DNA of 64,000 bases, from assembly GCF_000143415.4 (NCBI RefSeq), contig NW_003314394.1, positions 299,025-363,024 of the forward strand. The letters are read 5' to 3'. The stretch comes from Selaginella moellendorffii. Taxonomy: Eukaryota; Plantae; Lycopodiophyta. The translations under genes and the position numbers were made by a program. Below the pieces are notes generated by a model. That model was not told where the DNA came from. It made no database searches and saw only the letters and a list, made by a program, of their open reading frames with translations. Shown here in pieces: positions 40,090 through 59,106 of the stretch; the first letter of the stretch is position 1; every line of letters starts with the position of its first letter.

Positions 40090-43000
40090 TTCCATTTGAC
40101 TAAATATTCTTTGGTATAACCATTGTGTTTCTGGTGACATGATAAGATGTTTTCAACTTTGTATTTAGATTCACCACCCCACAACTTCTGGTGGCAGAAA
40201 AATCTCCTCTTGACATGCAATATTTATAATGTAAGGAGCCAATAAATTGGTATGAAATACATTATGAATATTTGATATTTCCGTAGGAAGATCCAACTAA
40301 TAGGATACATCACCAATTCATTTTAAAACTATATTTTGGTATCAACTTCCAAGACAAAGATCCCTTAATATATAAGTTTCTAGAAAATAACCAAACCAGA
40401 TAATCCTCAACTTGAGCATTCACACGTTCAATCTACCCATCGGTTTGAGGATGATAAGCTATACTAAACTTCAACTTGGTGTTGAACAACTAAGATTGTG
40501 CCCCAAAACTTCCCCATCAATCTCAAATCTCTATTTGAGATCATCTCTTCGAGAAGACCACAAACCCACACTACTTCATGGAAAACAACTTTGCTACTTA
40601 CTTCATATTTACTATTTCCATAGTTGGAATGAAGTGTGCAATCTTCAACAACCAATCCACAACCACCATCAAAGTATCATAACCCTTAGAGTTTAGCAAG
40701 CAAGTGATAAAGTTAAGTATCACACTCTAAAATGGCCATGCCGGTGCTGGAATGCATTAAAACTTCCCAGCCTGCTTCTTAGTTTTGCGCTTACATTGCT
40801 ATGTAAGAATAGGCATAATCTATTACCTTCTATACTAGACCAAAAAAAACCCTTTTTCAATGAAGTAAGAGTTTTTCATTTTCCACCATGTCCCGCTGCC
40901 GAAACATCATGATGTTCCTGTAGAAATAGTTGTCACAGATCCTTGGAAAGAAGATACAATCTTTCTTGCTTATAGAAAATAAGCCTATCTTGAACTAAGA
41001 AGTGAAGCTTTACATTGGCATGATTAGCAACTTTCACTGCTTCGCTACTAAGTTTTACTTCACCAACTTTGCATGGTGCAAGATTGCCTTCTCCAATGGA
41101 TCACTTCCATATAAAGCTTGAACATCTTCCAACTAGTCTGAATTGATTGCCGACATTTCTCAGAACTAAGCCTGACAACTCAATGCATCTGGAACAATAT
41201 TGTTTTTACCAGGTTTATAGATGATTTCAATATCAAATCTAACAAGCTTTTCTTGCTAACGTGTCTACTTCGGCATAAACTTTGGCTATGTAGCAAAGTA
41301 GCTCAATGTGTTATTATCCATATAAACCTTGGTATGTCCACCCAAATAGTGTCTCTAGTGTTCCAATGCCAACACTATAGCAAATGTCTCTTTCTTGTAC
41401 ATTGGCTATTTTCATTAGGTCTCATCCAATTTCTTGAAATAAAATGCAACAGGACAACTGTATTGTCTTAGTGTAACACCAACTGCATTATCATAATATT
41501 GTTGCAACATGGCACCTATAGCATAACCAGATGCATCACAATGCACTTCGAAGTGTTTATCAAGATTTGGGATCTTGAGAATAAGAACCATAGTCAAGAT
41601 CTCCTTTAACCATACAAAAACACACTGACAAGTTAGATGCTTTATTTTGTTAAAGTGGGACTTATTCAGTAAAGTGGGATATTAATTAGCATGTGTCCAC
41701 ATGCCATTTCTTAGTACTTAATTAATATTTATTAATATTTCTATCAGTTTTTTAATTTATTTTTTTATATTTCACAATATTATAACACAAAATCATATGA
41801 AAAGTTTTTAATTTATAAATTATAAAGTTAAAACTTCAATTTTTTATTGTTGTTATAAAAATGGCATGTGGCCACACACCATAAGTGGGATAATGAAAAG
41901 TCCCACTTTAACGAAATAAAGCATTTAGTGTTTAATAAAATAGTATACTACTCTTTGTTAACTCAGTCAATGAAAGAGCAATTCTTGCAAAATTGTGAAA
42001 AAACTTGCAATAGTATCCCGTCAAACGAAGAAAGGAATGAAAAACTAATATAATGGTTGGGACTTCCTAGGACTTCATCATTTTCACCTTCTTTTGATCC
42101 ATTTCAATTACACCACCACCAACTATATATCCAAGAAAGTTCATGTGAAATTGTACAAAAGCACATATACTTTCTTTAGCATATAGTTTGTGTTCATGCA
42201 ACTTCTAAAACACCAGTTCCAATTGTTTCAAATGATCCTCCAAGGTTTCATTAAAGACTAGAACATTGTCAATATATAGGATAACAAATGCATCCAAATA
42301 ATCTCTGAATATTCTATCCATTATTGCGTTGAATGTTGTTAGAGCATTATATAACCCAAACGGCATGACAAGGAACTCATAGGATCTGTATTGAGTCTTA
42401 AAGGCTATCTTTTCCACATCTTAATCTGCCACCTGTATCTGATGATATCCGAACTGCAAATCAAATTGCATAAAGAGTTTAAGCCAAAGTACTTTTTACA
42501 TACAGTCCCTTTGATATACTTGTTGAAGAAATCTATACCAAACACCATTTGAAAATCTGGTATCTTCAACATTTCTAAGTCCAAAACTGTATGGGCAATA
42601 TCTGTTTTTAATCCTAACAACTCTACTAAGTCTTTAGATGTCACGCTATACATAGCTCCCATGTCAATCATTACTTGGATTTAGTGTCCGTGGACAAAGC
42701 CTACTAAATACATCAATGGATCAGTGTTTGCATTGACTGCAAGAAAAATTTAAGGAAAGTAACAAAAGAAATTCACCTCTTCTTCCTCATAGTCTGCATT
42801 GACCAACTCGTCAACCCCTTCAGCTTCACCACCACTATCTTCCCTCATGACATTAACACAAAATTTTGTCTTATGCTTGTTAGGACATTCTGAGGACTTA
42901 TGTCCTACCTCTCCACAATGGAAACAATGACCCACACTACCTATTCTGCTAGGAGCAGGTTTCATAAATTGTTGTTATTTGTATCCACCAAGAAGAGGAA

Positions 43001-43216
43001 CAAAGGACCTAGGACTAAAAGAAGCTACTAGTGGTTGCTAACCACCACCTATATTAACTATTGTTTATGAGCCTCTAGGGTGGAATTTTTCTTCCACCCT
43101 TTATTTTCAATCACCTTGTTTATTCCCAAAGTTCTTATTCTTGTCTAAGGTACCAGCATACTGCTGCTAATATTGTTCTATGAAGGAGTGATTGAAAAAA
43201 ACTTGGTATGTTCCCT
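40090..43216 (-). mobile_element. Old, heavily decayed Ty3/gypsy pol; its gag-side remnant probably continues at ~58449-60340
   Basis: Zn knuckle CFHCGEVGHKSSEC, protease-like IDMGA, RT YEFLVMPFGL..YIDNVLVF, RNase H VHCDASGYAIGAML; many stops. Confidence 0.8.
41637..41924. mobile_element. 288-bp MITE derived from the 43221-58444 transposon family
   Basis: TIRs atgctttatttYgttaaagtgggactt; 4-bp TSD TTAG (41633-41636, 41925-41928); both ends match the ends of the large element in opposite orientation. Confidence 0.9.
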
Positions 43217-43662
43217 CCTTAAGCTTTATTTCATTAAAGTGGGAATTGTCATTATCCCACTTGTAAAATAAGGTTTCCAAACCTTTATATAGTATATAAA
43301 TATAACAAAATTCAACTGCATTGAGGCACATGCCATTTTATTTTAAACAAGGAAATGTCTACTCAATCACTTCTCCTCCCCCTGCCACTGCTTCACCTCT
43401 CTCTTCTCCTTGTCATCGTCATCCAATTTCTTTCCATCCTTTTAATATTGGCTCAGTTGCTCCGAGTCTAGGTGGAGCCCAAGTCCCCATTCAATCTTTA
43501 CTTTCCCCTTATTAATAAAACAACTTCGTAGACTTCCAATAACATGCTATAACACTTCTAGTATAATGCAAATCCTCTCAAAGAATTGTCTTTTAATATT
43601 AATACAATGGCATGGAACCCCATGCCATAATAAGTTACATTTTTAAATAAATATATGCCATC

Positions 43663-44515
43663 TTAGACTGTTATTTTTTGCCTCCAACGCCTATACAATA
43701 ATCTTGGAATTTCATCACTCTCCACACTATCAGGATTTAAACCCAATAGTAATGCCATCTCTTCTCTAATACGTCCACGCTCATGTTCAGTGGTCGAAAA
43801 ACCCATCTGGTTGAGCAGATTATGGAGATGTGGATAGTGCTTGGCTAGACAATATACATGCCATAAATGATGACTGGTGTCTTTCCGATCAAATGGCTTC
43901 TGATATACTGTTCCATCTGCCATTTGGTTGATTTCTGCAGCCACCTCCTGGACTGGCTGGTTCTCTATCACCATCGCTCCAAGCCGTTTTGCAAGGTGCC
44001 CCAGAACATACGGTTTCTTCTCCCTAGTTTCCATACTGCAAGAGATGGGGTGCACTGCATATGTGTGTGTGTTCGCTGCAGTTTTAATCGGCGAGTCATC
44101 GATAATGAGGATTTCACTTGACCTAGCAGTCCGGTTCATCACTACAGCCTCTGGCTTGACGAAGATGGGCTTACTACCCCTCACATGGACCATAGTCAAG
44201 CAATCCTCCTGCGTTAGGAGAAAGTCAAATGGTAATATTACTCGCGTCTGATCGTGCATCATCTGTAGCAACGTTAATGCATTGTGGCGCATCATGGATG
44301 TCCAAACTCCCAATTGCAAATTGAACCCGCCCCTCTGTTTTAAGTGTTGCATGGTCATTATTAGATCCCGCAGTTTCTCCCGTGTGATTAATGTGAATCT
44401 GTCTCTTTTGACCAACTTGCGACCGCAGGCTTTGGAGGGTGCAGTGACATTCGAGGACGAGCCACGCTCATGGGAGAAAAGGACACTGTTCAGATCAAAA
44501 ACGATACAGTACCTT
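43663..44515 (-). CDS. FCP1/NIF-like HAD phosphatase domain (transposon cargo; may be the last exon of a longer gene)
   Basis: In-frame upstream extension gives CIVFDLNSVL (HAD motif I, DLNG-like), then LGVWTSMMRHN and ILIIDDSPIKTAAN..AVHP. Confidence 0.7.
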
Positions 44516-45421
44516 TACCGTGACTCTGAAATGAAATGCGTCAGCATAAAAAATGGTACAAGTCAATTTTACCATCTACAATATTAGCGAATGGTGCTCC
44601 CGATGGTCGTTGAGAGGGTTTTGGTCGAGGAAACGTGAAGGGCGGAAATACTCTCCTCTGCAATGTGGGGTCAATCGCATCCGATGGCGTGTGGGCACAT
44701 GCCATTTCAGCTGTAGACTCTGGTACAACTGGCTCAACAGTGGCATGGGGTGGTTCCGATGGCGTGTGATCACACGCCATTTCAGCTGGTGCCTCCATTG
44801 GCAAAGTGGACATGACCGAACAGGCAGTAGGGGCGGTGTAGGGAGGTTCCAACGGCGCGTAGTCAGACGATTGGGCACACGTTGAGTCCGTTGGAAATGA
44901 GGATACGACCGGCTTGGCGGCTGGGGCGGCCTAATGCGGGTCCAATGGCGCCTGGTCACCGTCAGTTGGATACGTGGACAAGATTGACTCAGTGGTATGG
45001 GCAGCATCAAGTGGAGTGTGGTCAGCTTGCTTGGCGTTGATATGGATAGTAGCCTCCACCAGCTCTGATGACTCTTGCAGCCAAGTAGAGTCCACTGGCG
45101 GATCCATATGCATGTCCAAATATCTCCCTTTGATTGAGATGGTATCCTCCCGTGCTACTAAAAACAAACTCATTAGCACATTGAATCGACTATACTGTAT
45201 TTACCATCAACTGCTATTGAGGAACTAGGACCGATATCACTTGGGCGCACTACTAATTCTAAAGGATTGGACATACGTTTCAACCCTTGCTTGGCACTAT
45301 CCTTCCTCGACACTAAAGGCTAGAGTTTGTAAATTCAACTGAATAATCTCTACTTACCATTTGCTCTACGACCTACATGGACAATGTTAGAAATGGTAAA
45401 AGGTTAGGAATGGATGTACTA

Positions 45422-46490
45422 TTATTTACCTGATGGTTTGTCTTGTATGACCTTCCTCCGCTGCTCTTTGGCCACCTCATGCTGGCCATCATCGTCATCA
45501 TCGTCGTCGTCGTTATTGTGATCGTCACCATTGTGAGGACCATCCAAGTCCTCTTCGTCCTCCTCTTCTTCGTCCTCCTCTTCTTTGTCCTCCTCTTCGT
45601 CCTTCTGCTCTTCCTGCTCATTATCTTTCTCTGGCTCCTCATCTCCCTCCTGCATTTCTTCCATAGGCTGCTCAGGCTGGATGGCTTGTTCTTCGAGGAC
45701 CATCTTGGGAAAATCATCTGGCTGAGTCTCCATCTCAAAATACAAGACATCCATAGCCTGTTTTAGTGCATGACCTAGGACCGTATCCTCACCCGACTGT
45801 CTTAACATGGTTTCTACACGTTCTTGAACCCTTCGAAGACGACGAGATGAGAAAAACGTGGCCCTGACTTGAAAAGCATCCCTCATCCATTGTACCTCTC
45901 TATTGAGATTGGGGAAGGGGAGTCCGCCATAGGAATCTGAGTCAGGAGGTGGTGACTGCCTGCTTTCACTCAGCCCTTGATCTGCAATGAATGGCATGAG
46001 CACATACGCCATAACCACGAGGCATTACCTATCATCTTTTCGTTGCCCTTCTTCCTTTTCGAATCAAACGCCTCTGATCCTGACGACTGTCCAACGTGCT
46101 TTCGCTTTTTATGACCACTGTCAGTTTGAGCTTGGCTGGTGCTTGCCTATTTTGCCTTTGAAGAAGTGTCTCCTGCAAGGAATGGCATGAGACCACACGC
46201 CATTGCAAATATAATTTGTACCTCCTTTTTTTTTATTGCTTGTCTGTTTGTCCTTTTTCGATGCGCCACCAGTGCGCTTTTCAGTCCTCGTGTCTGAATA
46301 TTCATAACGATCTATAATCAAAATGGCGTGAGGCCTCACGTGACCTTACCTTGTGCAGGTTATGAGCTCGGCCCAACATGGGTATCTTCAACAGTAGCTG
46401 TTAACGCCGTTTCAGCATCTGGGGGTGGCCACGCTCCTGCATACAGAGCTTGTGAGATAACATTTAAACTTAAAGTGCGTACTCACCAGG
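45422..46490 (-). pseudogene. Short spliced exons and an acidic (D/E-rich) exon of the cargo gene
   Basis: Candidate GT-AG introns 45982-46028, 46173-46221 and 46312-46349; poly-D/E tract; premature TAA codons. Confidence 0.5.
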
Positions 46491-47151
46491 TTCGCAGAGA
46501 AGTTACTGTTTTTCTTTGGCAATTGTAATTATATGCTCCATTGAAGTCACCTCTTCAATGGAGTTTGTCACCGCAACACACGGGACACCCTTGAGTAGTG
46601 CGGCTCGAAAGAATAGTCCGCCGCAGTTGTACTCGACAACGCATTTGCCCTTGGAGTCGGAAGCAGGTGACCCACCCGCTATTGCGTTGAAGACCCAGCT
46701 GAGCATTTCCCATGCTGCACCTGGAGCTTTCTTTGGATTCGAAAGCTCCATAGCTGTCTTCAGTTCCTCAGGCACGGGTAAATTGACCTCCCTCAGATCA
46801 ATTCGATCGGCCTTGTCGAATGAAGCTGGGAAGTCACTCCAGTCCCACTCTGCTGCAGGACCAATAACAAGGGCGAGTGTGAAGATGCGGACATTCGTCG
46901 GTATCTTCTTCTTAACCATTATCCCATGGATCTCCCGCATCTCCTTGCCTTTCAACCGAGCCTTCACCTCGTTCAAGGCCTTCCAGAACTTGTGATAGGA
47001 TTCGGAGTCGTAGATCATATAGTGGACTGAAGATTCCACCTCCGCAAGTCCCACCATTAAGTCAATGATGGAGCTGACTTCGTCTGCATGAGTGATCTCC
47101 TCGTTTGTGAAGTCCATCACACAAAAGATGTTCTTGACCTGCTCTGATATA

Positions 47152-49867
47152 TGTTAGGATCCTATCCCTTACACCCTAAACCAACTGGCTAAAGGGGTGA
47201 TCACTTGATTGTAGGGCCCTTTCCTTATCCTATTATCCTGACCTGGTGCCTAACAATCCTCCCCCTCGTCAAGGAATGATCGTCTGTGATCATACTTAGG
47301 CCACCATCCGGTCACCATGGTCCTTCTCATAGGGTCTACCAAACCTTGGTTCTCCCTCTAGATCCACCATGTTGAATATTCCTTCAGAATATTCCTGCCC
47401 CACTCGTCAGCCACGAGAATCGAACTGGGCTCCGATACCAATGTTAGGATCCTATCCCTTACAATCCTCCCCCTACACTACCTCAAAAGCTCCACTGCGC
47501 CGCCGCTCCACTGTGAGCCCTAGGGTAGGTTAAGTCCCTTACCCTAACATGCCTTAATATACCCTTGAGCCTCCCTTTGACCGACGTTGACCACGTAGTC
47601 AAAGCTGGCGCCTAACAATTCTTTCCCCCCAACAAAGTCCTTGTCCCAAGGACGAGTTGTACCGGTGATCACCCTTTCTGGGGAATCTTGCTCAAGCTCC
47701 TGGTCCATCTTCCACAGCCGTATACATCAAGGAGGCATTGGGCCCGTCACTCCGAGATAGTACACCTTTCAACTGGCTGACATAAAATACCGGATGAATT
47801 TTCACCCCAACTGGCAGCCGCACTCGATAAGCCGCTTTACCAATGCGCTCCAGCACTTCATATGGACCAGCATATCGATGGGAAAGTTTATCACTCTTCC
47901 CTGTCCGTAAAGGCACCAAGGTGTTCCGCCGCTCACTTGACGGAAAGATCACTCGCACAAAGACGAGATCACCCACCTTATATTCCCGGAATTGGCGATG
48001 CTCATTAGCAAACTTCTCCACTCTATCCTGAGCTGCTTGCAAATTCCGTTTGCACACCACCAGAATCTCATCAAGTTCTGTGGCCAGATCAGTTGCCTCG
48101 GAATCAAGCTTTTGTTGAACGTCCTTACTCAAATGCAATCCCAACTCCACCGCTGTTCGAGGATGCCTTCCAAACATGGCAAAGTAAGGACTTAGCTTGG
48201 TTCCACTGTGTTGGCTATTGTTGTAAGCAAATTGCACCAACGGAAGATATAGATCCCATTGTCCTTGCCTTTGACCAATGCTACAACGTAGCATATCCTC
48301 CACCACCTGATTCACACGCTCAGTTTGCCCATCCGTCTGAGGATGATCTCCACTCGAGAGTTTCAAAGTCACTTGCATAGCCTTTGCAAAGATTTTCCAA
48401 AATCCACTGGTGAACTTTGAATCTCGATCACTAATGATGTCCTCCGGCAAACCAAAATCAGGAAAAACCTTCTCCAAGTAAACCGCCGCCAAGTCTGAGG
48501 CAGTGACAGTCTTCCGAAGAGCCAACAACCGCACATACTTCGTCAACCGATCCACTATGACCCATACTTGCTCCTTTTGCCTCTGTGTTCGTGGCAAACA
48601 AGTGATGAAGTCCATAGAGATACTACACCAACGGCTCTGAGGAATAGGTAAAGGTTGCAAAAGTCCCCGTGGCACCTTAACCCACTGACAAAGCTCACAT
48701 GATTTACAATACTTGAGGATATCAGCCTTGTAGTGTCCAAGTTCACCGCAATGATGACAACCCTGTCTATAATTCTTCACAAAGAACTTCTGCTTCTTGG
48801 ACCCCTTTGCATCTGAAGTAGTCACCACCGACTTCAACTTGTGATGCTTGTTCCCATCTTTGTGTCCACGGCGATCATCACGACGATTCTCGACAGAAGG
48901 ACTCCGCGAACGCTTGCGAGACTTGTGCTTGTCATTGTCAAGTCGACGAGCCGCATCAAAGAGCTCCTCCAAACTCTTTGTAGGTTGAGAATGACGCAAG
49001 TGTTGCCGCATGCTCTCACTATGTAGGCCATCAATGAAGTAGGACTTGTTCTGATCTGGATCCTTTGTTGGAACACGACTAATCGAGCGAGTAAGCTTCT
49101 CAATATAATCCCCGAGCGTCATTTTCCCTTGCTGGAAATGGCGAAGTTCTGTACGAGCATTCTCCACGTCGTAATGAGGGGCAAAACGTAAACGGAAAGC
49201 AGCCTCAAACTCATCCATGGTAGACACTGGTGGTTTCTTATCCGCAACACGGGACTCCTCAAGCCAATTCCACCATCGAAGACCCGCATCACGCAAAACC
49301 ATCGGAATAGCCACTAAAGCCTCTGCATCTGGAGTTCCTCTAGCAGCCAAAAACTTCTTCACATTGGCTAGCCAAGCAAGACACTCGTCCACACCACCAT
49401 CACCGGAAAAGGTTGGAATCTTGAGTCGATCTACCAAAGAAGGCTTACTTGGAGCGCTACCCCGTCCAGCCTCAAGTGCCTCAACACGCCCACGCATGGT
49501 ATCCATCATGCCATGCATCTCGTCTTGCATCTTTTGCTGATTTTTATTAAGGGCTCGCAGCTCATGAACCACATCTTGAATGGTCCAAATCTCCGCAGCT
49601 TCGTCGGCACCATCGTCGGCAATAGGATTCCAGCGTTCAGCTTGGTCGGCCATCGCAACCAATCCTCTGATACCAATGTTATGATCCGGCGCAAAAAGTC
49701 AAAGATCTCGTTGCCCTAGACTATGCTACGCCACCTCTTGAGGTTCCTATCCTCTGATACCAATGTTAGGATCCTATCCCTTACACCCTAAACCAACTGG
49801 CTAAAGGGGTGATCACTTGATTGTAGGGCCCTTTCCTTATCCTATTATCCTGACCTGGTGCCTAACA
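47152..49867 (-). mobile_element. Chimeric LTR element: TRIM with 104-bp 'LTR-B' fused to an internally deleted gypsy
   Basis: LTR-B at 47152-47255 and 49764-49867; TRIM internal region with PPT and PBS 47256-47440; LTR-A pieces ~47477-47617 and 49677-49748; duplicated PBS. Confidence 0.85.
47692..49662 (-). CDS. In-frame Gag-integrase fusion ORF (656 aa) from a deleted gypsy copy
   Basis: Gag joined at GHYK|ADILKYCKSC to the integrase; protease, RT and RNase H absent. Confidence 0.85.
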   Translation of the reverse strand: MVAMADQAERWNPIADDGADEAAEIWTIQDVVHELRALNKNQQKMQDEMHGMMDTMRGRVEALEAGRGSAPSKPSLVDRLKIPTFSGDGGVDECLAWLANVKKFLAARGTPDAEALVAIPMVLRDAGLRWWNWLEESRVADKKPPVSTMDEFEAAFRLRFAPHYDVENARTELRHFQQGKMTLGDYIEKLTRSISRVPTKDPDQNKSYFIDGLHSESMRQHLRHSQPTKSLEELFDAARRLDNDKHKSRKRSRSPSVENRRDDRRGHKDGNKHHKLKSVVTTSDAKGSKKQKFFVKNYRQGCHHCGELGHYKADILKYCKSCELCQWVKVPRGLLQPLPIPQSRWCSISMDFITCLPRTQRQKEQVWVIVDRLTKYVRLLALRKTVTASDLAAVYLEKVFPDFGLPEDIISDRDSKFTSGFWKIFAKAMQVTLKLSSGDHPQTDGQTERVNQVVEDMLRCSIGQRQGQWDLYLPLVQFAYNNSQHSGTKLSPYFAMFGRHPRTAVELGLHLSKDVQQKLDSEATDLATELDEILVVCKRNLQAAQDRVEKFANEHRQFREYKVGDLVFVRVIFPSSERRNTLVPLRTGKSDKLSHRYAGPYEVLERIGKAAYRVRLPVGVKIHPVFYVSQLKGVLSRSDGPNASLMYTAVEDGPGA

Positions 49868-52800
49868 ATCTCCACGGGAAACGATGCTCCTCCACCTTTG
49901 ATCCTCATCCGAATTCACGTATACCCGGTAAGGTTCTCGATAGGCCTCTGCTGCGGGGTCGAGCTGTTTCTGAAGCCGGCGGTCGACATCACTCTTAATG
50001 AAATTTGGATACTGATCCAACTTCTCAGCTTTACTTTTCGTGGCATCCCGCAGCAGATCGATGAACTTGGGGGCCCCTTCACGTACTCGTCGATGTCTTC
50101 ATTTGACAAATCCAACGCTTCCATCATCTCTTGCGTGGTGTCGATGCTCACCCTCTCCACGGCCACTTGCTTGAAGATCCAATCCTTCAATAGCACACGA
50201 GCTCTCAGAGTCGTGCACAAGTCCTCGTATGTCACAATATGGCCGGGAGTCATTTTGGTCTTGTTGAAGACTACCTCACCACGTAGAAGAGCATTAGCCA
50301 CTGTCAAAAGGTCGTCATCGCCTAGAGACCGCGAGAAACGCAAGGCATTGAGCTTCAAATCATTGGGCTTCCGGCCGTCCTCCACACCCATTGAGTTTAG
50401 TAACTCCCCGTCATGGTACCTCCTCAGCACATCTACCCATTTGTCAAAAACAACTTTTGTCGCGAGTAGAATGTTATGGATGCTGAGTGTGTCATTGACC
50501 CCCAGTGTTTTCGAGAGAAGACTCGAGAATTCCTGCAATGGAAATGGCGTGAGGCCACATGCTATGCCACATGCAACGAGGCTTACCTGCCAGGTGCTAG
50601 TTGCTAGTGCACGTCCTTGTCCTGGTTTTTGTGGCTTCTTCAGTTGAACCCAGAGCTTCCGTGTTCGTGCCAATGTCTCGTGCAGACCCGATTTGTAGCA
50701 CGTTTCTTGCTTGACATTCTGCGCGTGGGAGATGTATATGATAGATCGGAGGGGCGAGTTGCCTTTTATCAAGCGGACAACTCTTGTCTTGAAGACTTTC
50801 TTCACCTCCTTGCCCACCATAATATCCACAACTATCTCTTGCATCGCCAAGCTAGAATGCTGCCCGGAGACGGCATAGAACCGGATGTTCTGATCGTCCA
50901 ACACCTTCCTATTGATCAAGTCTGGAAACCTCGTCTCACCCTTCATTGTTCGGTAGTAGGGGATCACGTCTGCGATGTCGGGTGTTACTAGACTTGCCAA
51001 CATCTTCTGCTTCAGTTTCTCCACCCACTCATCAGATACTAGCCTGTGGTTGTATTTGCTTTGGATGTCGATACGGCTCACGTCGATTGTATATACTTTG
51101 TTGGAATAGTAACAAGTACTATTATCTGCGATGATTTTTGCTGCCTCTTCTTGCTCTTTCTGCTCTTTGCGGCTCTTCTTTTTGGTGGGTGTAGTGTTCG
51201 AACCCGAGGCAATGGCATCACCGAGTAGCTTCTTTTTTGGAGGAGAGTCAAACGTTGGCTTGAGCTTGACCACCCTTTTCTGCTTCGGGGTAGTTTTGAG
51301 ATCGACCCCCTTCCCCTTCGCTTTGCGAACTGGAGGCACTCTCAACGGCTCAATGTTGGAATATAGTTTTTGAACATCGCCGTAGGTGAGGTCCGTGGAT
51401 TCCATGTGATCTTCATAGACCCGCAGCGTCTTTGAAATTGTGGGCCTCCTGGACAACCTCTCCCTAGCTCCCTCTAGGAATTCCTCATAGCCGCTACCCC
51501 CCTCCGGGAAGCTGCTAGGATGTGCAAGGTGGATCTTGAAGGCAGACGCTGTCTCTACCACAAGTGCCAGTCCATATTCTTGCATGGAACTGTATGGAGT
51601 GTCTGTCACTTGGATGAGGATCCCCATGCATTCTTTTCTCCCACCATCTGTGTTGTACAGCCTCAGATCCTCGCCTTCCATCCCGAAAGTCCAACTGGTG
51701 ACCTCCTCCCCCTTCTCTGCAGCCACATTGACAGTGGCTGGAAGAAGAACGCAATTCCTCGCATGTTAAGAAATGCACAACAATTAGAGCTGACAGATGA
51801 AAAGCTAGCAGCTGGAAATAACGTGAGGCCACACGCCATTCACCACTGCATCAGATGTCTTGAGGCTGTATCCTAAGATGGCGTGAGGCTACACGCCATC
51901 TGTAACCAGACTGCACTCGAGAGCCCAATCGGTGCATGCCAATGTTGCTACTAAATGGCATGTGGCCTCATGCCATTTTCTACTTGGCCTAAAAGACTTA
52001 CCATTTGAAGCCGAATGGAGGCATGACAACCGGACTCGCTGGCGAATGTGCACTGTGTGTGCAGCGGATTGTAGCAGCAAGGCTACTCTGCCACTTACAG
52101 TTGGAGAGTGGCGCTGAAATCTCTCGGGACGCCAAGTGGGCTGCGTGTGGGTGGCGGAGTGGGCGGCGGAGTTGGCGGCGAAGTTACAAACTGGGTGTGT
52201 CTTGAAGTGGACGCTGATGCACACGAGCGCGATGCGAGCGCGAGTGTGATGCAAGCGCGAGTGGACACCGATGCACACGAGAAACCTGTAGAGAAGGTAG
52301 ATGAGCGCGAATGTGAGCGTGATCACGAGTGGGAGCGCGATGCGTGCGCGAGTGTGCGAGCGTGAGTACGAAGCAAAATGCAAAACCTAACCTCACACGC
52401 GCGAAATGTCACGACGGTTGGTAATCCCGCCACATCATCATTCCTCGGACTTGGGCACCACCATTAATTTCTGGATCGCCGCGCGTATGCATGCACGTGA
52501 AATCCAAAAGAAATCCGCAACGTCATCATTCCTCGGACTGCATGCACACGAAATCCAAAAGAAAGATCATGATTGGGATATCATTTAATACCCTCGCTAT
52601 ATTTATACCATGCATGATTGGATATTCCAAAGCATCTTGTATTTCCAAAAATGCCAGATGTTCAGCTAAATAAATTGTCAGAGGATTTGATGTGATGTTC
52701 AAGCGTGTAAGCTCATGCAATTTTGATCCCAAAAAATGCACCAAAAAATGCTCAATGTCATCTGGCGTTATCTCTTGAATGGCGTGGGGCCGCATGCCAT

Positions 52801-53273
52801 TTTCAAGGGCACATAGGAGTATATTCCTAGAATATTCTAACACGCGCGAGATTGTTTTGAGTTTTCTGGAGATCCAACCGTTAGATCGCAACTAGATTTT
52901 ACAGAATGGTATACAATGTCCTTCTTGATGACCCTGCAAAGAAGCATCTCGATCGGACACCACATGAGACCACACGAGCCTTACAATGTTTCAGAGGCAT
53001 TTGCCATAGATCCGACAGTTATTTTGCTCCAAGATTCTACAGTTTGGTGTGCATTGACCTTTCCATCAACACTGCAAAGGGATATCACAATCAGATGTGG
53101 GATCACAAGAAACCAACTTCACTAACTCTGGTTTCACCAAGATCTACGTAAAGAGTTATGAAATGAAAGGACCCTCTCTATTGAAATGTGTTTATGGTCC
53201 TAGGGGCATTGTGACATATCAAAGGATTTTGCATCAAGTTCTGTATTTGCATGTTTATCAAGCTACTGAATTG

Positions 53274-53300
53274 CTAAACCCTAAACCCTAAACCCTAAAC
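53274..53300. repeat. Interstitial plant telomere repeat (CCCTAAA), about 4 units
   Basis: ctaaaccctaaaccctaaaccctaaac. Confidence 0.85.
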
Positions 53301-54584
53301 ATGTGGCAAATGCTGCGTGAAGAAAGATGCCCTTTCTGGGCAAATGCTGTAAGAGGCAAATGTCGAGCAGATGTATCTCAGGCTAGCGAAGGGGACAAAC
53401 GAAAGCTAGCTATAAACATGACGGGATGCAAATAGATTACTAGGCTGGTCCTGCGAAAATCAAAAACCATAATTGAAAATATTGAAAATGCAAAAAGAAA
53501 GGTTTATAATATTTTTGAATTTTAAGCAACCAAAGGAATGTAAGTAGGGCATGTGTTTGTAAGTTTAAAAATGCCTCAACCACTTAAATTCCCAAGTAAA
53601 TAAAGCTGTTTCTATTTTTGGTACAGGTAAACTTTATAGCGTGTGGGCTCATGCAATTTTGAACCCAAAAATGCACCAAAAAATGCTTGACTAGCATTAT
53701 TCTTTGAATGGCGTATGGCTTTATATTGCCATAAATGGACGTACACACACAGCATAATTATTCCTTTACACGGCGAATAATCTTGGCGCGGATCGCTGAC
53801 ACGGCATGGCAAAGTTCGAATCACTGACATGGCACAGCTGGATCGAGGCAAGGACATGATGTGACAAAGTTCAACCTCCGACACAAAGTCTAGAAGCTAC
53901 TCAGTTTGAAATTTGTCAGAGGAATCATAAGATCTGGTTTGTCAGAGGATTTGATGTGACGTTCAAGCGTGTGTTATTTTTGAATTCTCGAACTCATTCC
54001 TAGGTCTATCATTTTTGTGCGCTGTGTTCTTGGTTCCGCTGAGCGCAGTGAGCGCTGCTTGTGTAAGCGGCGTTGTGAGCTGTGGTTTATGCGTCTACAA
54101 GCGGTTGTGGCATTGCGAGCGCCATTGCAAGCGGCAGTTTATGCGAGTGGCAGTTTGTGCGAGCGGCGCTATGAGTAGTTGCGGTGTTGTGAGCGGCACT
54201 ACGAGTAGTTGCGGTGTTGCGAGCGGCACTGTCTTTGGTGTGGCTACCGCTTCCTCTTGATATTCGGCACTTGTGCTTCCTAGTATGTTCACCATGGAAT
54301 GGCTTAGGACCACATTTAGAAATGGCATGAGGCCACATGCCATCTTGGGCCCTTGCAATTTCATGGCTAGCGTATTGTCATGTATGTTTTCACTTGCCTG
54401 CAGCTATATGTATATCAAGATGGCATGAGGCCTCATGCCAATTTTGTGAATGCAAAATTTCACGTGGGTGTCAATAGCATGTTTGAATAATAGCATGTGG
54501 CCTCATGTCATTTGGTATGTTATGATTTAGGCCATTCTCCAATCATTTTTTGTATGGTTTTAACTTCTTTTCTGCACTTTCAGA

Positions 54585-57500
54585 ATGGCCTTCAGGGTTG
54601 GGGAAAAGGTTTACATTTTGAATGGTGGGAAGAGAATTGCAAAAGGGACCCTTGTGTCTATGGATCGGAACTTTGTTATACACTGTCAAAGGCTTGGAGA
54701 AGGCAATGCTACTGTATCAGTAGAGACTGTCTTCGATGGGAATGTGGTCGCTATTGAACCAGGAGAGATGGTCGTCGGGGTAAATGTTGTTGTTGCCTTG
54801 AAAAATCTGCAAAAGAAAGCAGATGTTGGGGACAGCGCAAGTGCGACGCATGTTCCCTCCGTGGATCTTAAGAACCGTGCTACATGGATTCAGGCAAAAG
54901 TGTTTCTAAACAACCCCGAGGGGGAGGTGGTAGCTGAGGGCTTAGCCACAGTTGTCGATCCAAGAGATGCGGTTGCTAATCAAGAATTGGGCTGGGATGA
55001 TATTGGAGTTGCGATTTTAAAGGTTGTTGACACAGAAGAAAACAGTCTGACTATTGGAAGCATTGTGCGGTGGAAATTGAGGCATTTAGTGTTTGAGAAT
55101 GTGAAGGATTCACAATCAAACACCACTACAACTGATGACAGAACATCTCTTCATGGGAAAAGAAAGTACACCTTCCTAAAGCGCAGCCAAAGGGATCTGA
55201 GCAACGAACCGAAAAGGCAGAAAATGGCGATGGAGGTTCGAATGGTCTCGACAGTTGCTTGTTGCAAGAGGAGGTGCTGTCAACATGCTGATTGGGATGC
55301 TATTGAAGAGGAGAGAGCAAGATACAAGACATTGTCCTGGAAGGTAGCTCGCAATTTTGTGTATGAGGCATTACGGTCATCTGTTGATGCTTCAGAACAT
55401 CAGGTGGGGGGCATGGTCTTCCTGAGGGGTTTGGTCTGCATGAAGGCATGGAGAATCATTTATGGAGTCCCTCGAAGCACATTCTACAGAATCAAAACTG
55501 AGTTCGAGGAACAAAGGGTTCAACAGGCAGTCCATGGGAACGACGGTACGCACAAAACCAGGGGTCATGTTGTATATGGAGAGGCAATCTTCAAGAGGTT
55601 TGTCGAGACATGTAGCGAGCAGCAACCACATAAAACCCGCCTCTTGGAAGATGGAACACGAGACACCCAACGAGTTCTCCCTTCCATGTATACCAAGGGG
55701 GCCATATTGGAAGATGTGAATCGGGAACTCCAGAGTAATGGCTACAGGAAGCTGAGCCAATCTAGATTTAGTAAATTGTGGAGCAACAGGTTCAGGGATG
55801 TGAGTATAGGAAAGTACTCCAGCTTTTCAAAGTGTGACGAGTGCACTGCTATCAAAATGGCTTTGTCGAAGAATTCTTGCAGCGCTCAAGAGCGAGAGAC
55901 GTTAGTTAGAAGGCGGCTCGACCACAACATCGAGCAGAGAAGCTGCAGGACTGCATATTATCATAACAGGATTCTCTCCATGGAGAGACCTGACTCTTAC
56001 CTCTGCATCATCCACGACAAAATAGACCAGAAAAAGACGTGCTTACCTCGACTCAATCCTGCCCCCAAGGCAATCTCTTCATCCATGCAGCTGCCTGTGT
56101 CTCTGTTTGGCATAATCGCTCATGGGCATGGTGCCCAGAACTATGGGAACTTCTTTGTACCTCTATGGGGTGGCGGGGGTGCAAACATGATGATTGCGTC
56201 CCTAACAAAACACTTAAGGTCTCTGCAAAGTGCGCAGACTGAGCTGAACGGCCAACCCTTGCATAAGGCCCTTGTCGATCGAACCCCATACAGGGTTCAG
56301 CTGGAGGAGGAGCAAAGGCTTGCAGTATTGCGTGGGGCCCCATGCCATCCCAGTGAATATGTTGGCCGTCAGATTGTAGGGTTATCACGTGAGGCCTCAT
56401 GCCATTCCGACGAGGCTGGTCGCTCGGTGAATGCACAGCCTCATCCAAACGAAGCAGAATCTCAAGGAAGTTCTTGCGGCCGATGTGGCCTTCCACCCCA
56501 TCTTCTGCTCCAAACAGACAATGCTGGCAGTGAGAACAAAAACATGTACGTCTTCGCGTACTTGGCGATGCTTATTGCCAAAGGCATATTTGAAATGGTT
56601 ACACTTGGCTTTCTCATGGTTGGGCACACTCATGAAGACGTCGATGCCATGTTCAGTCACCTGGCAAGTCCCTCCGGCGATCCAATGTCCTCACCCTCCC
56701 ACAACTCTACGATGAATTCCAAAATTGCATCAAAGGCACTGTTGAAGCTGCACTTGTGACAGAGGTTCCAGACTTTAAGGGGTTTGTAAGAGGCTACATC
56801 AGGGACGGATCCAAAATGCTGATTGGCCACTCCAAGCCTCTTCAGTTTCATTTCAGCATGCGTTACGGTGCTCCAGTGATGAGGTACAAGATGAGAGAAT
56901 GGGACACACTGTGGCTGCCAGTGGACGGCATTGAACTCTTCAAGAGAGATCCCATAACTGGGGAACCTATGATTCCTCAGGGTTCCCCACGGCCGATGCA
57001 CCCGGATGGACTCAAAGACCAGGAAAGTATAGTGGCCGGGATTAGACAGCATATTGCCTTCTGGAAGAGGGGGTTGGTGTTTGGTGGAGAATCCTATTTT
57101 AAGAGGTGCAAGCCTTTGCTCGAATACTGGAAGAAGATTATATCTACTATCCAAAATGGGCCGGTTGTATATGAAGAATTGGAAGAGTCCTTTTGGCCAG
57201 AACCCAGAGCACCAGATAGTAGCGGAACAATGTCCCCTGGAAATGCAGTGATAGATAACGATGTTGAGGATCACTATTGTGGGCCGAGGAACAAGAAGCC
57301 AGATTCAGCATTCAATCCAGTACAGGTCTGCAAAGGAATGCTCGTGCTTGTCAGACCCAGTAATAAAAAACAAATGATATGGGTGGGGTGCTGCATCATT
57401 GATGCAGAGGAGGACGCGGAAACTAACTCCTTCAATGTAACTGTGGAGTGGTTCAAGCCAAGTTCCGGATATACGAAGGATTGCCTAGAAAAGAGATGGG

Positions 57501-57725
57501 TGCTGAATCCAAGGGATCCCAGCATGAGCATATCGGTGGGTAATGTTGTGCATGGTTGGATGCGGAAGCAGAGTGCCACCATCACCTTGCCAGACCATGC
57601 AAGAGATGCAGCAAGAGCATTCATAACCCGGGTTCAAGGTGAGATTCATTAATATTCCTTTACTAAGTTTCTAATGTATTTTATTTCAAGGTGAACAATC
57701 CGAATCTGAATCAGAGGAGGCGTGA
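54585..57725 (+). pseudogene. DDD transposase (Sola1-like) with a one-base frameshift at ~56663
   Basis: CCKRRC and KCDEC cysteine clusters; catalytic-type motifs IIHDKIDQKK, QTDNAGSENKN, FLMVGHTHEDVDAMFSH; the shifted frame reads on GKSLRRSNVLTLPQL...VPDFKGFV. Confidence 0.8.
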
Positions 57726-59106
57726 TGGCATGGCGTGATGGCGTGAGGTGTGACACCAAAAAGGAGGTGTCCACTAGCGCTTAGGCTTATAATGGCGTGT
57801 GCCCTCATGCCATTTACTTGATCACCAAATACCTTTTTCCCTTTGCACTAGTATATCTTAATACCGGTCTGAGAAATAGAATGGCATATGCCCTCAGGCC
57901 TTTTACTAAATCACCTTTGAAAGAAATGCAAGCCTCTATGTCATAAAAAAAAGGTACTAGAGAAATTCCTTAATAATATGAATGTTATTTAGTTTCATGA
58001 AAATACACTAAGGGTCAAATGAGTTAAATGACTTCTCCAGACTAGCAATGCCTCTTGCTACACCTTCACAATTAGATTCGTTAGAAAAAGATAACATTGA
58101 ATAATATCTAAATGTTCTCACCATTAAGTTATATGTCTGGCTAATAGGAATGACGTTCATCTTGGAAAGCTCACCACACGCTCAATGAACAAACAAATAG
58201 TGTGTGCGCGCATGCCATCGCTCTTCTTTAGCTTCAGATTCGGCTTGTTCACCTTGACAATGAGATTTATTATACAACCAGATGGACTCAGTCTGGACAC
58301 AAAGTCACCGCACTAGTCACCATGCCCCAGATATGTCTAGCCCCTGGACAAAAAACATATAATTTCACGTCATTTTCAAATACTTGAAAATTTGTACCTA
58401 GTCCCATTTTACTGAATAAATCCCACTTTAACGAAATAGAGCTTCCTTACACTCTATGAAAATTTACTAAATATGAAATGGCACTAGATTGGCCCGTATC
58501 CATTTCCTTCTCTGTTTTAATGTGCTAATGTTTCTTTTACAACAGCCAATTTGTACTTTATCTTGGATTGTAACCATCTAAGAGTTCCAGCCAACTTTTC
58601 ACATGCAAATTTGTATGATGGATCTGTGTATGATGGATTTGAATGAGTTCCTGGTTGCTAAGGCTACCTCTTTTGTGGTCCTAGTAGCATTATAGTACAT
58701 TATAGTGTACTTGGATTCAGGCAAGTTCCCAACAGATTCCTTACAAGCGCAACAAAAGGCATTGAAGATTCGAGTGTAGGAGTTTTGCCTTCTTGACGGA
58801 CATCTTTGCACCATAGCTACTTTTGGCCTCAAATTCACCAGCATATCTTAGACTATGCAAATATGAGACACAAATCCGTAAGCCCCAAAGTGGAGCCAAA
58901 AGGGTGCCACATGGTGGTGGTCGAAGTGGAAGTCCAATAAGTGTAATATGTTTGAACCAAAGACTCCAACTTGGAAAGTTGAGAGTGGGAGTGGAACTCC
59001 AAACAAAGTGCTCGAGAAATGAACACAAAGCATTTAGTGAATGAATCTCTAAAAAGGGACACAAGAAGGATTGACACATGGCAAATGTTATGATGCATGG
59101 AAGTGT

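What the first reader, a model, noticed from the sequence alone, without database searches (positions are those of the whole stretch)
43315..58218. About 20 dispersed copies of a 22-bp palindrome confined to the transposon: candidate self-recognition (parS-like or anti-silencing) sites
Consensus ATGGCRTG-wGGCCw-CAYGCCAT. Copies (some degenerate) start at ~43315, 43607, 44684, 44759, 45991, 46182, 46323, 50544, 51818, 51878, 51955, 52779, 53708, 54322, 54420, 54490, 56327, 56384, 57792, 57881 and 58197, plus two in the MITE. I saw none in the genic 35 kb or the LTR elements. Arm length and the 6-nt spacer are nearly constant while the spacer sequence varies, as expected for a dimeric protein site. 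Established analogies: ParB loads at palindromic parS sites, and Arabidopsis VANDAL elements use VANC proteins bound to dispersed internal motifs to escape silencing. Inference: the encoded ParB-like protein or the transposase binds these sites to mark, protect or synapse the element.
Basis: partly seen in the sequence, partly recalled or inferred. Interest (0 to 1): 0.9.

Follow-up and report, generated by a model that had tools for sequence, protein, structure and literature searches.

The report
Private palindromic recognition sites of a transposon
A plant DNA transposon carries about two dozen copies of one 22-bp palindrome in its non-coding DNA, and its distant relatives carry different palindromes of their own, so these are most likely lineage-specific docking sites for a transposon-encoded DNA-binding protein.

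Summary
ATGGCRTG-N6-CAYGCCAT (up to 3 mismatches) occurs 25 times in the window against 0.84 expected. Twenty-four copies lie in a 15.2-kb TIR transposon (43221-58444) and its 288-bp MITE relative. The nested retrotransposon fragment and the other 47 kb have none beyond one chance-level hit.

The motif is one continuous palindrome, (A)ATGGCGTG-AGGCCT-CACGCCAT(T). The centre is conserved, not a free spacer. Copies avoid coding-like DNA (3 of 22, p=6e-5) and their flanks are unrelated. The two half-sites vary independently, with no hairpin covariation. CpG decay is one-sided (CA 26, TG 3), which points to constraint on each half-site.

The key new evidence is comparative. Relatives of the transposase (Pfam DUF7869, 32-55% identity) carry different recurrent 16-24-bp palindromes upstream of their transposase genes, and the motif type follows the transposase clade.

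The best reading is operator-like sites for a dimeric element-encoded protein, probably the transposase's fast-evolving N-terminal region. They would serve end recognition and self-regulation or anti-silencing. No ParB-like protein could be confirmed. This works like VANDAL-VANC or Spm-TnpA motifs, but in an uncharacterised transposon family and in palindromic form.

The parts
43221..58444 (.). Autonomous-type TIR DNA transposon (decayed copy), flanked by 4-bp target-site duplication CCTT (43217-43220 and 58445-58448)
   Evidence: Inverted repeats I7/I9/I14. End alignment with the MITE and with Logan copy L001, whose homology stops at the same right end.
43221..43262 (+). Left terminal inverted repeat, AAGCTTTATTTCATTAAAGTGGGA..., with its own motif TAAAGTGGGA
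58402..58444 (-). Right terminal inverted repeat
   Evidence: identical in L001
41637..41924 (.). 288-bp MITE of the same family, in opposite orientation, TSD TTAG. It keeps one palindrome just inside each TIR.
   Evidence: I10, end alignment, motif hits 41686 and 41861
41686..41707 (.). Palindrome copy (2 mismatches), MITE, subterminal
41861..41882 (.). Palindrome copy (1 mismatch), MITE, abuts the TIR
43315..43336 (.). Palindrome copy (3 mismatches), 95 bp inside the left end
43607..43628 (.). Palindrome copy (0 mismatches), just downstream of the last minus-strand ORF
44684..44705 (.). Palindrome copy (0 mismatches), first unit of a 75-bp tandem duplication
   Evidence: D14
44759..44780 (.). 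Palindrome copy (0 mismatches), second unit of the 75-bp duplication
   Evidence: D14
45991..46012 (.). Palindrome copy (1 mismatch) inside a 47-nt GT..AG segment (45982-46028, minus strand). Removing that segment joins two ORF segments in frame.
   Evidence: read from the sequence
46182..46203 (.). Palindrome copy (0 mismatches) inside a 49-nt GT..AG segment (46173-46221, minus strand)
46323..46344 (.). Palindrome copy (3 mismatches), directly 3' of a GTAAG on the minus strand
50544..50565 (.). Palindrome copy (1 mismatch) inside a 54-nt GTAAG..TTGCAG segment (50533-50586, minus strand) within the 603-aa ORF
51818..51839 (.). Palindrome copy (2 mismatches), non-coding stretch 51738-52001 at the 5' end of the minus-strand gene
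51878..51899 (.). Palindrome copy (0 mismatches), same 5' non-coding stretch
51955..51976 (.). Palindrome copy (0 mismatches), same 5' non-coding stretch
52779..52800 (.). Palindrome copy (0 mismatches), spacer between the divergent genes
53636..53657 (.). Palindrome copy (2 mismatches), intergenic spacer.
54322..54343 (.). Palindrome copy (0 mismatches), 263 bp upstream of the transposase ATG
54420..54441 (.). Palindrome copy (1 mismatch), 165 bp upstream of the ATG; present in L001
54490..54511 (.). Palindrome copy (2 mismatches), 95 bp upstream of the ATG; present in L001
56327..56348 (.). Palindrome copy (1 mismatch), in frame inside the transposase ORF, in a non-conserved low-confidence loop
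56384..56405 (.). Palindrome copy (2 mismatches), in frame in the same loop
57738..57759 (.). Degenerate copy (3 mismatches), preceded by two direct half-sites at 57725 and 57730
57792..57813 (.). Palindrome copy (0 mismatches), downstream of the transposase ORF
57881..57902 (.). Palindrome copy (3 mismatches), downstream of the transposase ORF
58197..58218 (.). Palindrome copy (2 mismatches), 227 bp inside the right end
54585..57652 (+). Transposase gene (Pfam DUF7869), broken by one frameshift near 56,700-56,756. It has two N-terminal beta-barrels, a helical HTH-like region and an RNase H-like core (D478, D643, E684).
49918..51765 (-).
43666..44514 (-). Accessory ORF segment with an NIF/FCP1-like phosphatase domain
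   Evidence: E 8.3e-6, 26 bits, cut-off 21.8
47134..49874 (-). Nested Ty3-type retrotransposon fragment (not part of the element proper); free of the palindrome

Best explanation
The palindromes are the family-specific cis-recognition sites ('operators') of this DNA transposon. Each 22-26-bp site consists of two inverted half-sites, (A)ATGGCRTGWGG, whose centres are 11 bp apart. That is the geometry expected for a dimer of a sequence-specific DNA-binding protein encoded by the element.

The most likely binder is the transposase, through its fast-evolving N-terminal region (beta-barrels plus an HTH-like helical region). It is the only protein known to be shared by all the lineages that show such palindromes.

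Sites next to the TIRs, the only internal sequence the MITE keeps, would recruit the protein to the ends for transposition. The many internal sites sit in clusters of 2-3 about every 0.5-1.5 kb: in introns, in UTRs and at the 5' ends of both divergent genes. They would let the same protein, or an accessory one, mark the whole element for self-regulation or anti-silencing.

Because each lineage has its own palindrome, recognition is private to the lineage.

Shown: the enrichment, the confinement to the family, the architecture, the independence of the half-sites, the one-sided decay and the lineage-specific turnover. Inferred: that a protein binds, which protein it is, and what binding achieves.
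For: (1) There are 25 hits against 0.84 expected, 24 of them in the element and its MITE. Half-site 8-mers occur 34 times inside and 2 times outside.

(2) The copies are depleted in coding-like DNA: 3 of 22 sites in the 56% of the element that is long ORF (binomial p=5.8e-5). The two copies in the transposase ORF lie in a non-conserved loop that falls largely in the model's low-confidence stretch (pLDDT 67 for residues 581-590, below 50 for 592-631).

(3) The flanks are unrelated: mean 4.4 of 16 identical bases against 4.0 for random pairs. The motif itself has 1.5-2.0 bits at 8 of 11 half-site positions.

(4) Hairpin pairing is no more frequent than when the 3' arms are shuffled among copies: 75.8% against 76.6 +/- 1.4%, covariation 0.143 against 0.154. 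The half-sites therefore evolve independently, as expected for protein half-sites.

(5) CpG decay in the half-site is one-sided: CA 26, TG 3, CG 18 (p=1.5e-5). C5 is kept and position 6 is free.

(6) The MITE keeps one palindrome 0-6 bp inside each TIR.

(7) Relatives have their own palindromes in the 0.8-1.7 kb upstream of the transposase ORF. L010 has CCTATGGCC-N4-GGCCATAGG, 12 hits against 0.00 expected, all upstream of the ORF. L012 has TTGACCAT-N-TGGTCAA at 6 sites against about 0.4 expected hits. L002, L009, L011 and L013 have AGGCTCAAAC-N4-GTTTGAGCCT, 2-4 each.

(8) Motif type follows the transposase clade. L002 and L010 come from the same sample.

(9) The N-terminal regions are the fastest-evolving parts of the transposase: 22-50% identity against 66-96% in the core segment that holds the second D and the E.

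(10) Two other copies of the family (L001 and P0164) keep the orthologous palindromes.
Against: No binding data exist, and no DNA-binding domain was identified by sequence. The HTH-like reading rests on an AlphaFold model and my inspection of it; the PDB fold search gave no significant match.

The TIRs carry a different repeated motif (TAAAGTGGGA). That motif could be the true transposase site, leaving the palindromes to another protein.

In three relatives some or all copies sit in long tandem repeats (L002, L009, L013). That alone can multiply any sequence.

In L010 the non-palindromic spacer (CTTT) has the same orientation in most copies. This fits directional duplication or an RNA role as well as it fits protein binding.

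Only one window, one partial second copy and short contigs of unidentified relatives were available. No genome-wide count was possible.
Confidence: 0.6

Rival explanations
1. RNA-level element: the palindromes act as short stem-loops in the element's pre-mRNAs (introns, UTRs), for example to tune splicing of the very short introns, RNA stability, or recognition by an RNA-binding protein.
For: Most copies lie in probably transcribed non-coding DNA. Four sit in 47-54-nt GT..AG segments, 9-11 nt upstream of the AG. L010 copies share one spacer orientation, CTTT, on the transposase sense strand. Among the asymmetric centres in the window, 8 read TGGCCT and 2 read AGGCCA on the sense strand (my count; not significant).
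Against: There is no covariation between the arms. Folding energies of the intron-sized segments are unremarkable (z = -2.2 to +0.3). Copies also occur next to the TIRs of a non-coding MITE and in the spacer between divergent genes. One-sided CpG decay is a property of a DNA half-site, not of a pairing rule. There is no Rfam match.
Confidence: 0.12
2. Selfish or mutational by-product: a tiny palindromic unit that spreads within the element by insertion, short-patch gene conversion or tandem duplication. It would have no function for the transposon, and some copies may have created or filled mini-introns.
For: Flanks are unrelated, as if only the 22-26-bp unit moved. Two copies sit in frame inside the transposase ORF like insertions. 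Three copies share an extra GCCTCGT box a few bases away (45991, 50544, 56384). In relatives the motif is partly multiplied by long tandem repeats.
Against: No target-site duplications flank the copies; the flanks merely extend the palindrome. There are no copies outside the family in 47 kb, nor in the nested retrotransposon. A parasite of the element would not be expected to be replaced by a different palindrome in each transposase clade. It would also not show constraint on C5 but not on position 6.
Confidence: 0.15
3. ParB/parS-like loading: an accessory ParB-like CTPase encoded on the minus strand loads at the palindromes and spreads over the element.
For: The site shape, a palindrome of about 16-22 bp in clusters, resembles parS. 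By eye, the stretch around residues 205-320 of the 603-aa ORF has a pattern loosely reminiscent of a ParB N-terminal domain (my reading only).
Against: There is no Pfam ParB-family hit for the ORF or for the excised region, even at E<=10. There is no PDB relative and no homologue in its length range. The model is unusable. The relatives that show palindromes are known only by their transposase.
Confidence: 0.05
4. Host-factor sites: the palindromes are bound by a host protein (transcription factor, silencing or insulating factor) that the element exploits or that targets it.
For: Clusters sit next to the 5' ends of both genes. The half-site contains a CpG, so host methylation could modulate it.
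Against: A host factor's motif should also appear in host DNA, yet there is none in 47 kb of flanking genes and retroelements. Co-resident lineages from one sample use different palindromes, which fits element-encoded specificity better.
Confidence: 0.08

Closest known systems
VANDAL (Mutator-like) elements and their VANC anti-silencing proteins in Arabidopsis (PMC5735166; PMC10398659)
   Same: A short element-specific DNA motif is enriched in the non-coding parts of the element, including introns and regions upstream of the transposase gene, and is rare elsewhere. Related lineages carry different motifs that co-diversify with an element-encoded protein. In some relatives here the motifs are also multiplied by tandem repeats.
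   Different: VANC motifs are 8-9 bp, non-palindromic, and arrayed in one orientation in tandem repeats. Here the sites are 16-24-bp palindromes, and in the window they sit mostly as singletons or clusters of 2-3 in unrelated contexts. The transposase is not a MULE (Pfam DUF7869; 4-bp rather than 9-bp TSD). No VANC homologue is seen. Effects on methylation are untested.
En/Spm (CACTA) TnpA and its subterminal 10-12-bp motifs (bioRxiv 10.64898/2026.08.24.746577, read)
   Same: An element-encoded sequence-specific protein binds clustered family-specific motifs. The Arabidopsis Spm1 motif CCVTCGCAAA contains a CpG, as this half-site does. Motif and lineage co-diversify, and non-autonomous derivatives keep the motifs.
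   Different: TnpA motifs and their hypomethylation are confined to the termini. Here the sites run through the whole element. The transposase family and TSD length differ.
Subterminal transposase-binding repeats of TIR transposons in general (e.g. Muta1, PMC5499845; Lemi1/Emigrant, PMC1636448)
   Same: Repeated binding sites lie just inside the TIRs and are retained by MITEs. A palindromic pattern can matter for binding: the Muta1 terminal motif is an imperfect palindrome (PMC5499845).
   Different: Those repeats lie within about 150-300 bp of the ends. Here most copies are internal, up to 7 kb from either end.
Bacterial ParB-parS partition and condensation systems (from general knowledge)
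   Same: Palindromic sites of similar size, in several copies, are recognised by a dimer.
   Different: No ParB-like domain could be detected in any ORF of the element. This is a eukaryotic nuclear transposon, and spreading or CTP dependence is unknown.
Bacterial REP elements and their RAYT transposases (from general knowledge)
   Same: Short palindromes are multiplied many times, each family being tied to its own transposase-like protein.
   Different: REPs are recognised as single-strand hairpins by Y1 (HUH) transposases and are scattered over the host genome. Here the enzyme is a DDE/RNase H-type transposase, the arms show no pairing covariation, and the copies stay inside the element.

Membership tests
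ParB-parS system | A ParB/Srx-fold N-terminal (CTPase) domain protein is encoded nearby | tested here: not met
   No Pfam hit for the 603-aa ORF or its pieces even at E<=10. No PDB sequence match. The single-sequence model is unusable (pLDDT 31.5). A very remote relationship cannot be excluded.
ParB-parS system | Palindromic binding sites in multiple copies | tested here: met
   This feature is shared with many dimeric DNA-binding proteins and is not specific to ParB.
VANDAL/VANC anti-silencing system | Mutator-like (MURA) transposase, about 9-bp TSD, and a VANC-family protein | tested here: not met
   The transposase hits only Pfam DUF7869. TSDs are 4 bp in two independent insertions. No accessory ORF has a family assignment apart from an NIF-like phosphatase domain.
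VANDAL/VANC anti-silencing system | Element-specific motif concentrated in non-coding parts of the element, differing between related lineages | tested here: met
   window; relatives
VANDAL/VANC anti-silencing system | Binding causes loss of DNA methylation and derepression | not testable with these tools
   Needs methylomes and expression of the protein.
Subterminal transposase-binding repeats | Sites lie just inside the TIRs and are retained in non-autonomous derivatives | tested here: met
   The MITE 41637-41924 keeps one site 0-6 bp inside each TIR. The large element has sites 95 bp and 227 bp from its ends.
Subterminal transposase-binding repeats | Sites are restricted to the terminal few hundred bp | tested here: not met
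   Twenty of the 22 copies in the large element are more than 300 bp from either end.
Structured RNA / hairpin element | Compensatory changes keep the two arms paired | tested here: not met
   Pairing is 75.8% observed against 76.6% for shuffled partners. Covariation is 0.143 against 0.154, and 347-379 of 500 shuffles reach the observed values. There is no Rfam family.
Miniature mobile element / introner-like insertion | Each copy is flanked by a target-site duplication, and copies occur at unrelated genomic sites | tested here: not met
   The flanking bases extend the palindrome (A on the left, T on the right) instead of forming direct repeats. There are no copies outside the family in the window. 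The whole genome was not available.
DUF7869 DDE transposase family (Pfam PF25273) | Match to the Pfam model above its gathering score; conserved D..D..E in an RNase H-like fold | tested here: met
   99.2 bits against a cut-off of 26. There are 4496 representative relatives at E<=1e-3. D478 is nearly invariant in the alignments. D643 and E684 are my assignment from the conserved QxDN and GHTHED consensus motifs and the strand/helix order of the model. The eukaryotic superfamily (Sola, CMC or other) was not assigned.

The most novel reading that the evidence does not exclude
A large, so far uncharacterised family of plant DNA transposons (DUF7869 transposases, 4-bp TSDs) runs a lineage-private 'operator code'. 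Each lineage's transposase, with tandem Tudor/Agenet-like barrels plus an HTH, binds as a dimer to its own 16-24-bp palindrome, which is sown through all non-coding DNA of the element. This coats the element, and with a CpG in the half-site it makes binding methylation-sensitive. The result would be a VANC-like anti-silencing or self-activation switch that evolved independently of Mutator and CACTA elements.
Probability: 0.2. Interest if true: 0.8.

Novelty: new variant of a known kind. Interest (0 to 1): 0.62.

Why it matters
Self-recognition by transposons is well worked out for only a few plant families (Mutator/VANDAL, En/Spm, Ac). It covers how an element's proteins find their own copies, and only those, for transposition, regulation or escape from silencing.

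Here a different and apparently undescribed transposase family shows the same logic in an unusually clean form. The sites are long and palindromic, so they are easy to predict. They are present in many copies per element. They are replaced by a different palindrome in each lineage.

That gives four or more natural protein-site pairs with which to test how specificity co-evolves. It also gives a simple sequence signature for annotating the family and its MITEs. No paper in the searchable library mentions DUF7869 or DUF8039.

Tried and rejected
- An exact-motif scan of JGI metagenome contigs gave only three single hits in high-GC (63-71%) contigs, apparently bacterial and unrelated to the window. 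These are chance hits.
- RNA folding of the intron-sized segments gave unremarkable z-scores. Rfam and tRNA scans were empty.
- The ParB idea found no support: Pfam at E<=10 on the whole accessory ORF and its pieces, a PDB sequence search, a homologue search (blank within 0.55-1.75x length only) and a single-sequence AlphaFold model (pLDDT 31.5). It could not be strictly excluded.
- The fold search of the transposase model against the PDB gave no significant whole-chain match. There were only weak KOW/Tudor/Agenet-like and RNase H-like (PIWI, Mos1, TnsB) similarities. The profile search against PDB sequences gave nothing.
- The superfamily was not assigned. The paper describing Sola elements was not held, and the other papers gave no diagnostic motifs.
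- Longer genomic context for relatives could not be obtained. All contigs were 6 kb or less, and three were only ORF-sized. P0164 is not on record.
- L014 is 99.7% identical to L010, too close for a substitution-rate test.
- The host species was not identified.
- Spliced models of the minus-strand genes were not joined. Their ORF segments were searched separately by reference. The frameshifted transposase was searched as two pieces.


Full report
**1.

The pattern ATGGCRTG-N6-CAYGCCAT with up to three mismatches has 25 matches in the 64-kb window. Dinucleotide-preserving shuffles give 0.84 +/- 0.87, and none gave more than 4. Twenty-four matches lie between 41686 and 58218. The remaining one (16015, three mismatches) is what chance predicts.

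The tools add 53636 and 57738. A rescan that leaves the CpG positions free finds no extra element copies. Exact half-site 8-mers occur 34 times inside 41634-58445 and twice in the other 47 kb.

**2. What carries the copies**

The copies belong to a TIR transposon at 43221-58444. Its roughly 42-bp terminal inverted repeats, AAGCTTTATTTCATTAAAGTGGGA..., are flanked by a 4-bp duplication CCTT. The same ends, in opposite orientation, bound a 288-bp MITE at 41637-41924 with the duplication TTAG.

An independent Logan contig, L001, is a deletion derivative 97.5% identical over the transposase gene. Its homology to the window stops at the same right end, where a different flank begins.

The element is decayed:
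- A Ty3-type retrotransposon fragment is nested at 47134-49874.
- The transposase ORF (54585-57652) has one frameshift.

The surrounding genes are two PPR genes, two fasciclin genes, a lectin/PAN gene and a VARLMGL/DUF3741 gene. They show the host is a land plant. The species was not identified.

**3. Anatomy of the motif**

Stacking the 48 half-sites gives (a)A-T-G-G-C-R-T-G-W-G-G. Eight of the eleven positions carry 1.5-2.0 bits, and the signal fades within two bases outside.

The whole site is therefore one continuous palindrome of 22-26 bp, with the centres of its two half-sites 11 bp (about one helical turn) apart.

The R/Y alternation is a CpG and its decay product. The decay is one-sided: CG 18, CA 26, TG 3. 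Neutral deamination predicts CA:TG of 1:1 (p=1.5e-5). So C at half-site position 5 has been kept while position 6 is free.

**4. Where the copies sit**

Excluding the nested insertion, the element has 12.5 kb of its own DNA and one site per 567 bp. Sites come in clusters of two or three spaced 54-98 bp apart. Long ORF segments make up 56% of that DNA but hold only 3 of 22 sites (p=5.8e-5).

The positions are:
- Next to the ends: 43315 and 58197, and both MITE copies, one of which abuts the TIR.
- At the 5' end of the minus-strand gene: 51818, 51878, 51955.
- In the spacer between the divergent genes: 52779, 53636.
- In the 265 bp upstream of the transposase ATG: 54322, 54420, 54490.
- Downstream of both gene sets: 43607; 57738-57881.
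- Inside four short GT..AG segments on the minus strand: 45991, 46182, 46323, 50544.

Removing the 47-nt segment 45982-46028 joins two long ORF segments in frame. The intron reading is therefore reasonable for that one and tentative for the others.

Two copies (56327, 56384) are translated in frame within the transposase. They lie in a loop that is not conserved in homologues (10-33% identity) and that falls largely in the model's low-confidence stretch (pLDDT 67 for residues 581-590, below 50 for 592-631). L001 and the UniParc-derived protein P0164 (97% identical) keep both.

ORF segments were searched one by one by reference, and the frameshifted transposase was searched as two pieces.

**5. 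Tests between a DNA-protein site and a hairpin**

On an ungapped alignment of the 24 copies, 75.8% of arm positions can pair. Shuffling the 3' arms among copies gives 76.6 +/- 1.4%. The covariation score is 0.143 against 0.154. The two arms therefore vary independently, as separate protein half-sites would, and not as a maintained stem.

Predicted RNA folds of the intron-sized segments are unremarkable (z = -2.2 to +0.3), and there is no Rfam match.

The flanks of different copies are unrelated: 4.4 of 16 identical bases against 4.0 for random pairs. Only the local tandem pairs 44684/44759 and 57792/57881 share context. No direct repeats flank the copies, so a miniature mobile element is not supported.

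**6. The comparative result**

The transposase matches only Pfam DUF7869 (99 bits). It belongs to a large family: 4496 representative proteins at E<=1e-3. No paper in the library mentions the domain.

Contigs with 0.8-1.7 kb of upstream DNA could be fetched for six relatives. All six have a recurrent palindrome of their own there and none in the ORF.

| Locus | Protein | Palindrome | Count |
|---|---|---|---|
| L010 | P0157 | CCTATGGCC-N4-GGCCATAGG | 12 hits at up to 3 mismatches against 0.00 expected, all at 16-1497, upstream of the ORF start at 1661 |
| L012 | P0156 | TTGACCAT-N-TGGTCAA | 6 sites against about 0.4 expected hits |
| L002, L009, L011, L013 | P0002, P0152, P0163, P0154 | AGGCTCAAAC-N4-GTTTGAGCCT | 2-4 each |

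Motif type follows the transposase clade:
- The four AGGCTCAAAC proteins are 48-78% identical to each other.
- They are 40-45% identical to P0157 and P0156.
- P0157 and P0156 are 54% identical to each other and have different motifs.
- The window's protein is 30-39% identical to all of them.

L002 and L010 come from the same sample. The window's motif is absent from all relatives at zero mismatches.

In L002, L009 and L013 some copies are multiplied by long tandem repeats. In L010, a 139-bp ancient duplication at about 73% identity keeps one palindrome plus a few neighbouring bases perfectly: 28 identical columns. The N-terminal 320 residues of the transposases are their fastest-evolving part, at 22-50% identity against 66-96% in the core segment holding the second D and the E.

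**7. The proteins**

An AlphaFold model of the first 724 residues with a 45-sequence alignment has mean pLDDT 74.7. It shows:
- two N-terminal beta-barrels (8-64 and 105-170);
- a helical region (208-308) that includes a CCxxxCC motif and a helix-turn-helix-like pair (my reading of the model);
- a strand and helix order that I read as an RNase H-like core, with D478, D643 and E684.

The PDB fold search gave only weak similarities: KOW/Tudor/Agenet-like for the barrels and PIWI/Mos1/TnsB-like for the core. None was significant.

The minus-strand ORFs gave one family assignment, an NIF/FCP1-like phosphatase domain at 43666-44514 (E 8.3e-6).

**8. Interpretation**

The most economical reading has these parts:
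- The palindromes are lineage-private recognition sites for a dimeric element-encoded DNA-binding protein.
- That protein is most likely the transposase, through its rapidly evolving N-terminal region.
- Sites next to the TIRs, the only internal sequence the MITE keeps, serve end recognition.
- The many internal sites, especially those at the 5' ends of both genes, serve self-regulation or anti-silencing.

Shown: enrichment, confinement, avoidance of constrained coding sequence, independent half-sites, one-sided decay, retention in the MITE and lineage-specific turnover. Inferred: binding, the identity of the binder, and the consequence of binding.

The main caveat is that the TIRs carry a separate repeated motif (TAAAGTGGGA). 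The palindromes might therefore belong to an accessory protein. The constant spacer orientation in L010 keeps a strand-specific (RNA or duplication) explanation alive.

**9. Comparison with known systems**

Functionally this is closest to the VANDAL-VANC system. There, 8-9-bp motifs fill introns and upstream regions, differ between lineages and recruit an anti-silencing protein (PMC5735166). It is also close to Spm-TnpA, with its clustered, CpG-containing, lineage-specific motifs at the termini (bioRxiv 10.64898/2026.08.24.746577).

It is not a member of either. The transposase is neither a MULE nor recognisably CACTA, TSDs are 4 bp, the sites are long palindromes, and they are not confined to the termini. 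It shares only the site shape with ParB-parS.

I rate it a new variant of a known kind, in a transposon family that appears uncharacterised.

Noticed in passing
window 47134-49874 and 60332-63873: A Ty3-type retrotransposon fragment (fused gag-integrase ORF 47692-49662) is nested inside the DNA transposon. A sibling copy lies 13 kb downstream, 96-99% identical in blocks.
   Followed up: partly
window 53276-53299: There is an interstitial plant-type telomere repeat, (CCCTAAA)x3, in the spacer between the two divergent genes of the element.
   Followed up: no
window 57686-57732 and 58211-58257: A 47-bp inverted duplication (83% complementary, 478 bp apart) has a palindrome half-site at each inner edge. 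The left arm overlaps the 3' end region of the transposase gene.
   Followed up: no
window 43666-44514 (minus strand): The last accessory ORF segment has an NIF/FCP1-like phosphatase domain (E 8.3e-6). Its first motif reads D-L-N rather than DxD, so it may be catalytically altered. This is an unusual cargo for a DNA transposon.
   Followed up: partly
window 43221-43262, 58402-58444, 41637-41680, 41883-41924: The TIRs carry their own motif, TAAAGTGGGA, which is distinct from the palindrome. The two ends differ: one has a direct repeat of the motif and the other an inverted repeat. The MITE has the same two end types.
   Followed up: partly
window 45991, 50544, 56384 (flanks): Three palindrome copies share an extra box, GCCTCGT, a few bases from the palindrome, in the same chromosomal orientation. 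This suggests that some copies spread as a slightly longer unit.
   Followed up: partly
window 52225-52356 and 54158-54217: GCGAGCG-rich short tandem repeats sit on both sides of the intergenic spacer, near the presumed 5' ends of the two divergent genes.
   Followed up: no
window 59172-59410: A roughly 23-bp tandem array (GGAGTCCAAGATGGA-like units) lies just outside the right end of the element.
   Followed up: no
L001 (Logan ERR10900155), whole contig: This second copy of the family has two internal deletions, corresponding to window 54594-54835 and 56717-58312. It is a deletion derivative on the way to a non-autonomous element.
   Followed up: partly
window 46506-47133 (minus strand): By eye, this ORF segment has a glycine-rich stretch that loosely recalls a Rossmann-type nucleotide or SAM-binding motif. 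Pfam gave no hit (best E 0.17, to an unrelated family).
   Followed up: partly
L006, L007, L008: Three full-length relatives (1101-1250 aa) sit on contigs barely longer than the ORF. That may mean these are transcript assemblies. The long ORFs are uninterrupted, so the transposase genes of this family seem largely intron-free.
   Followed up: no
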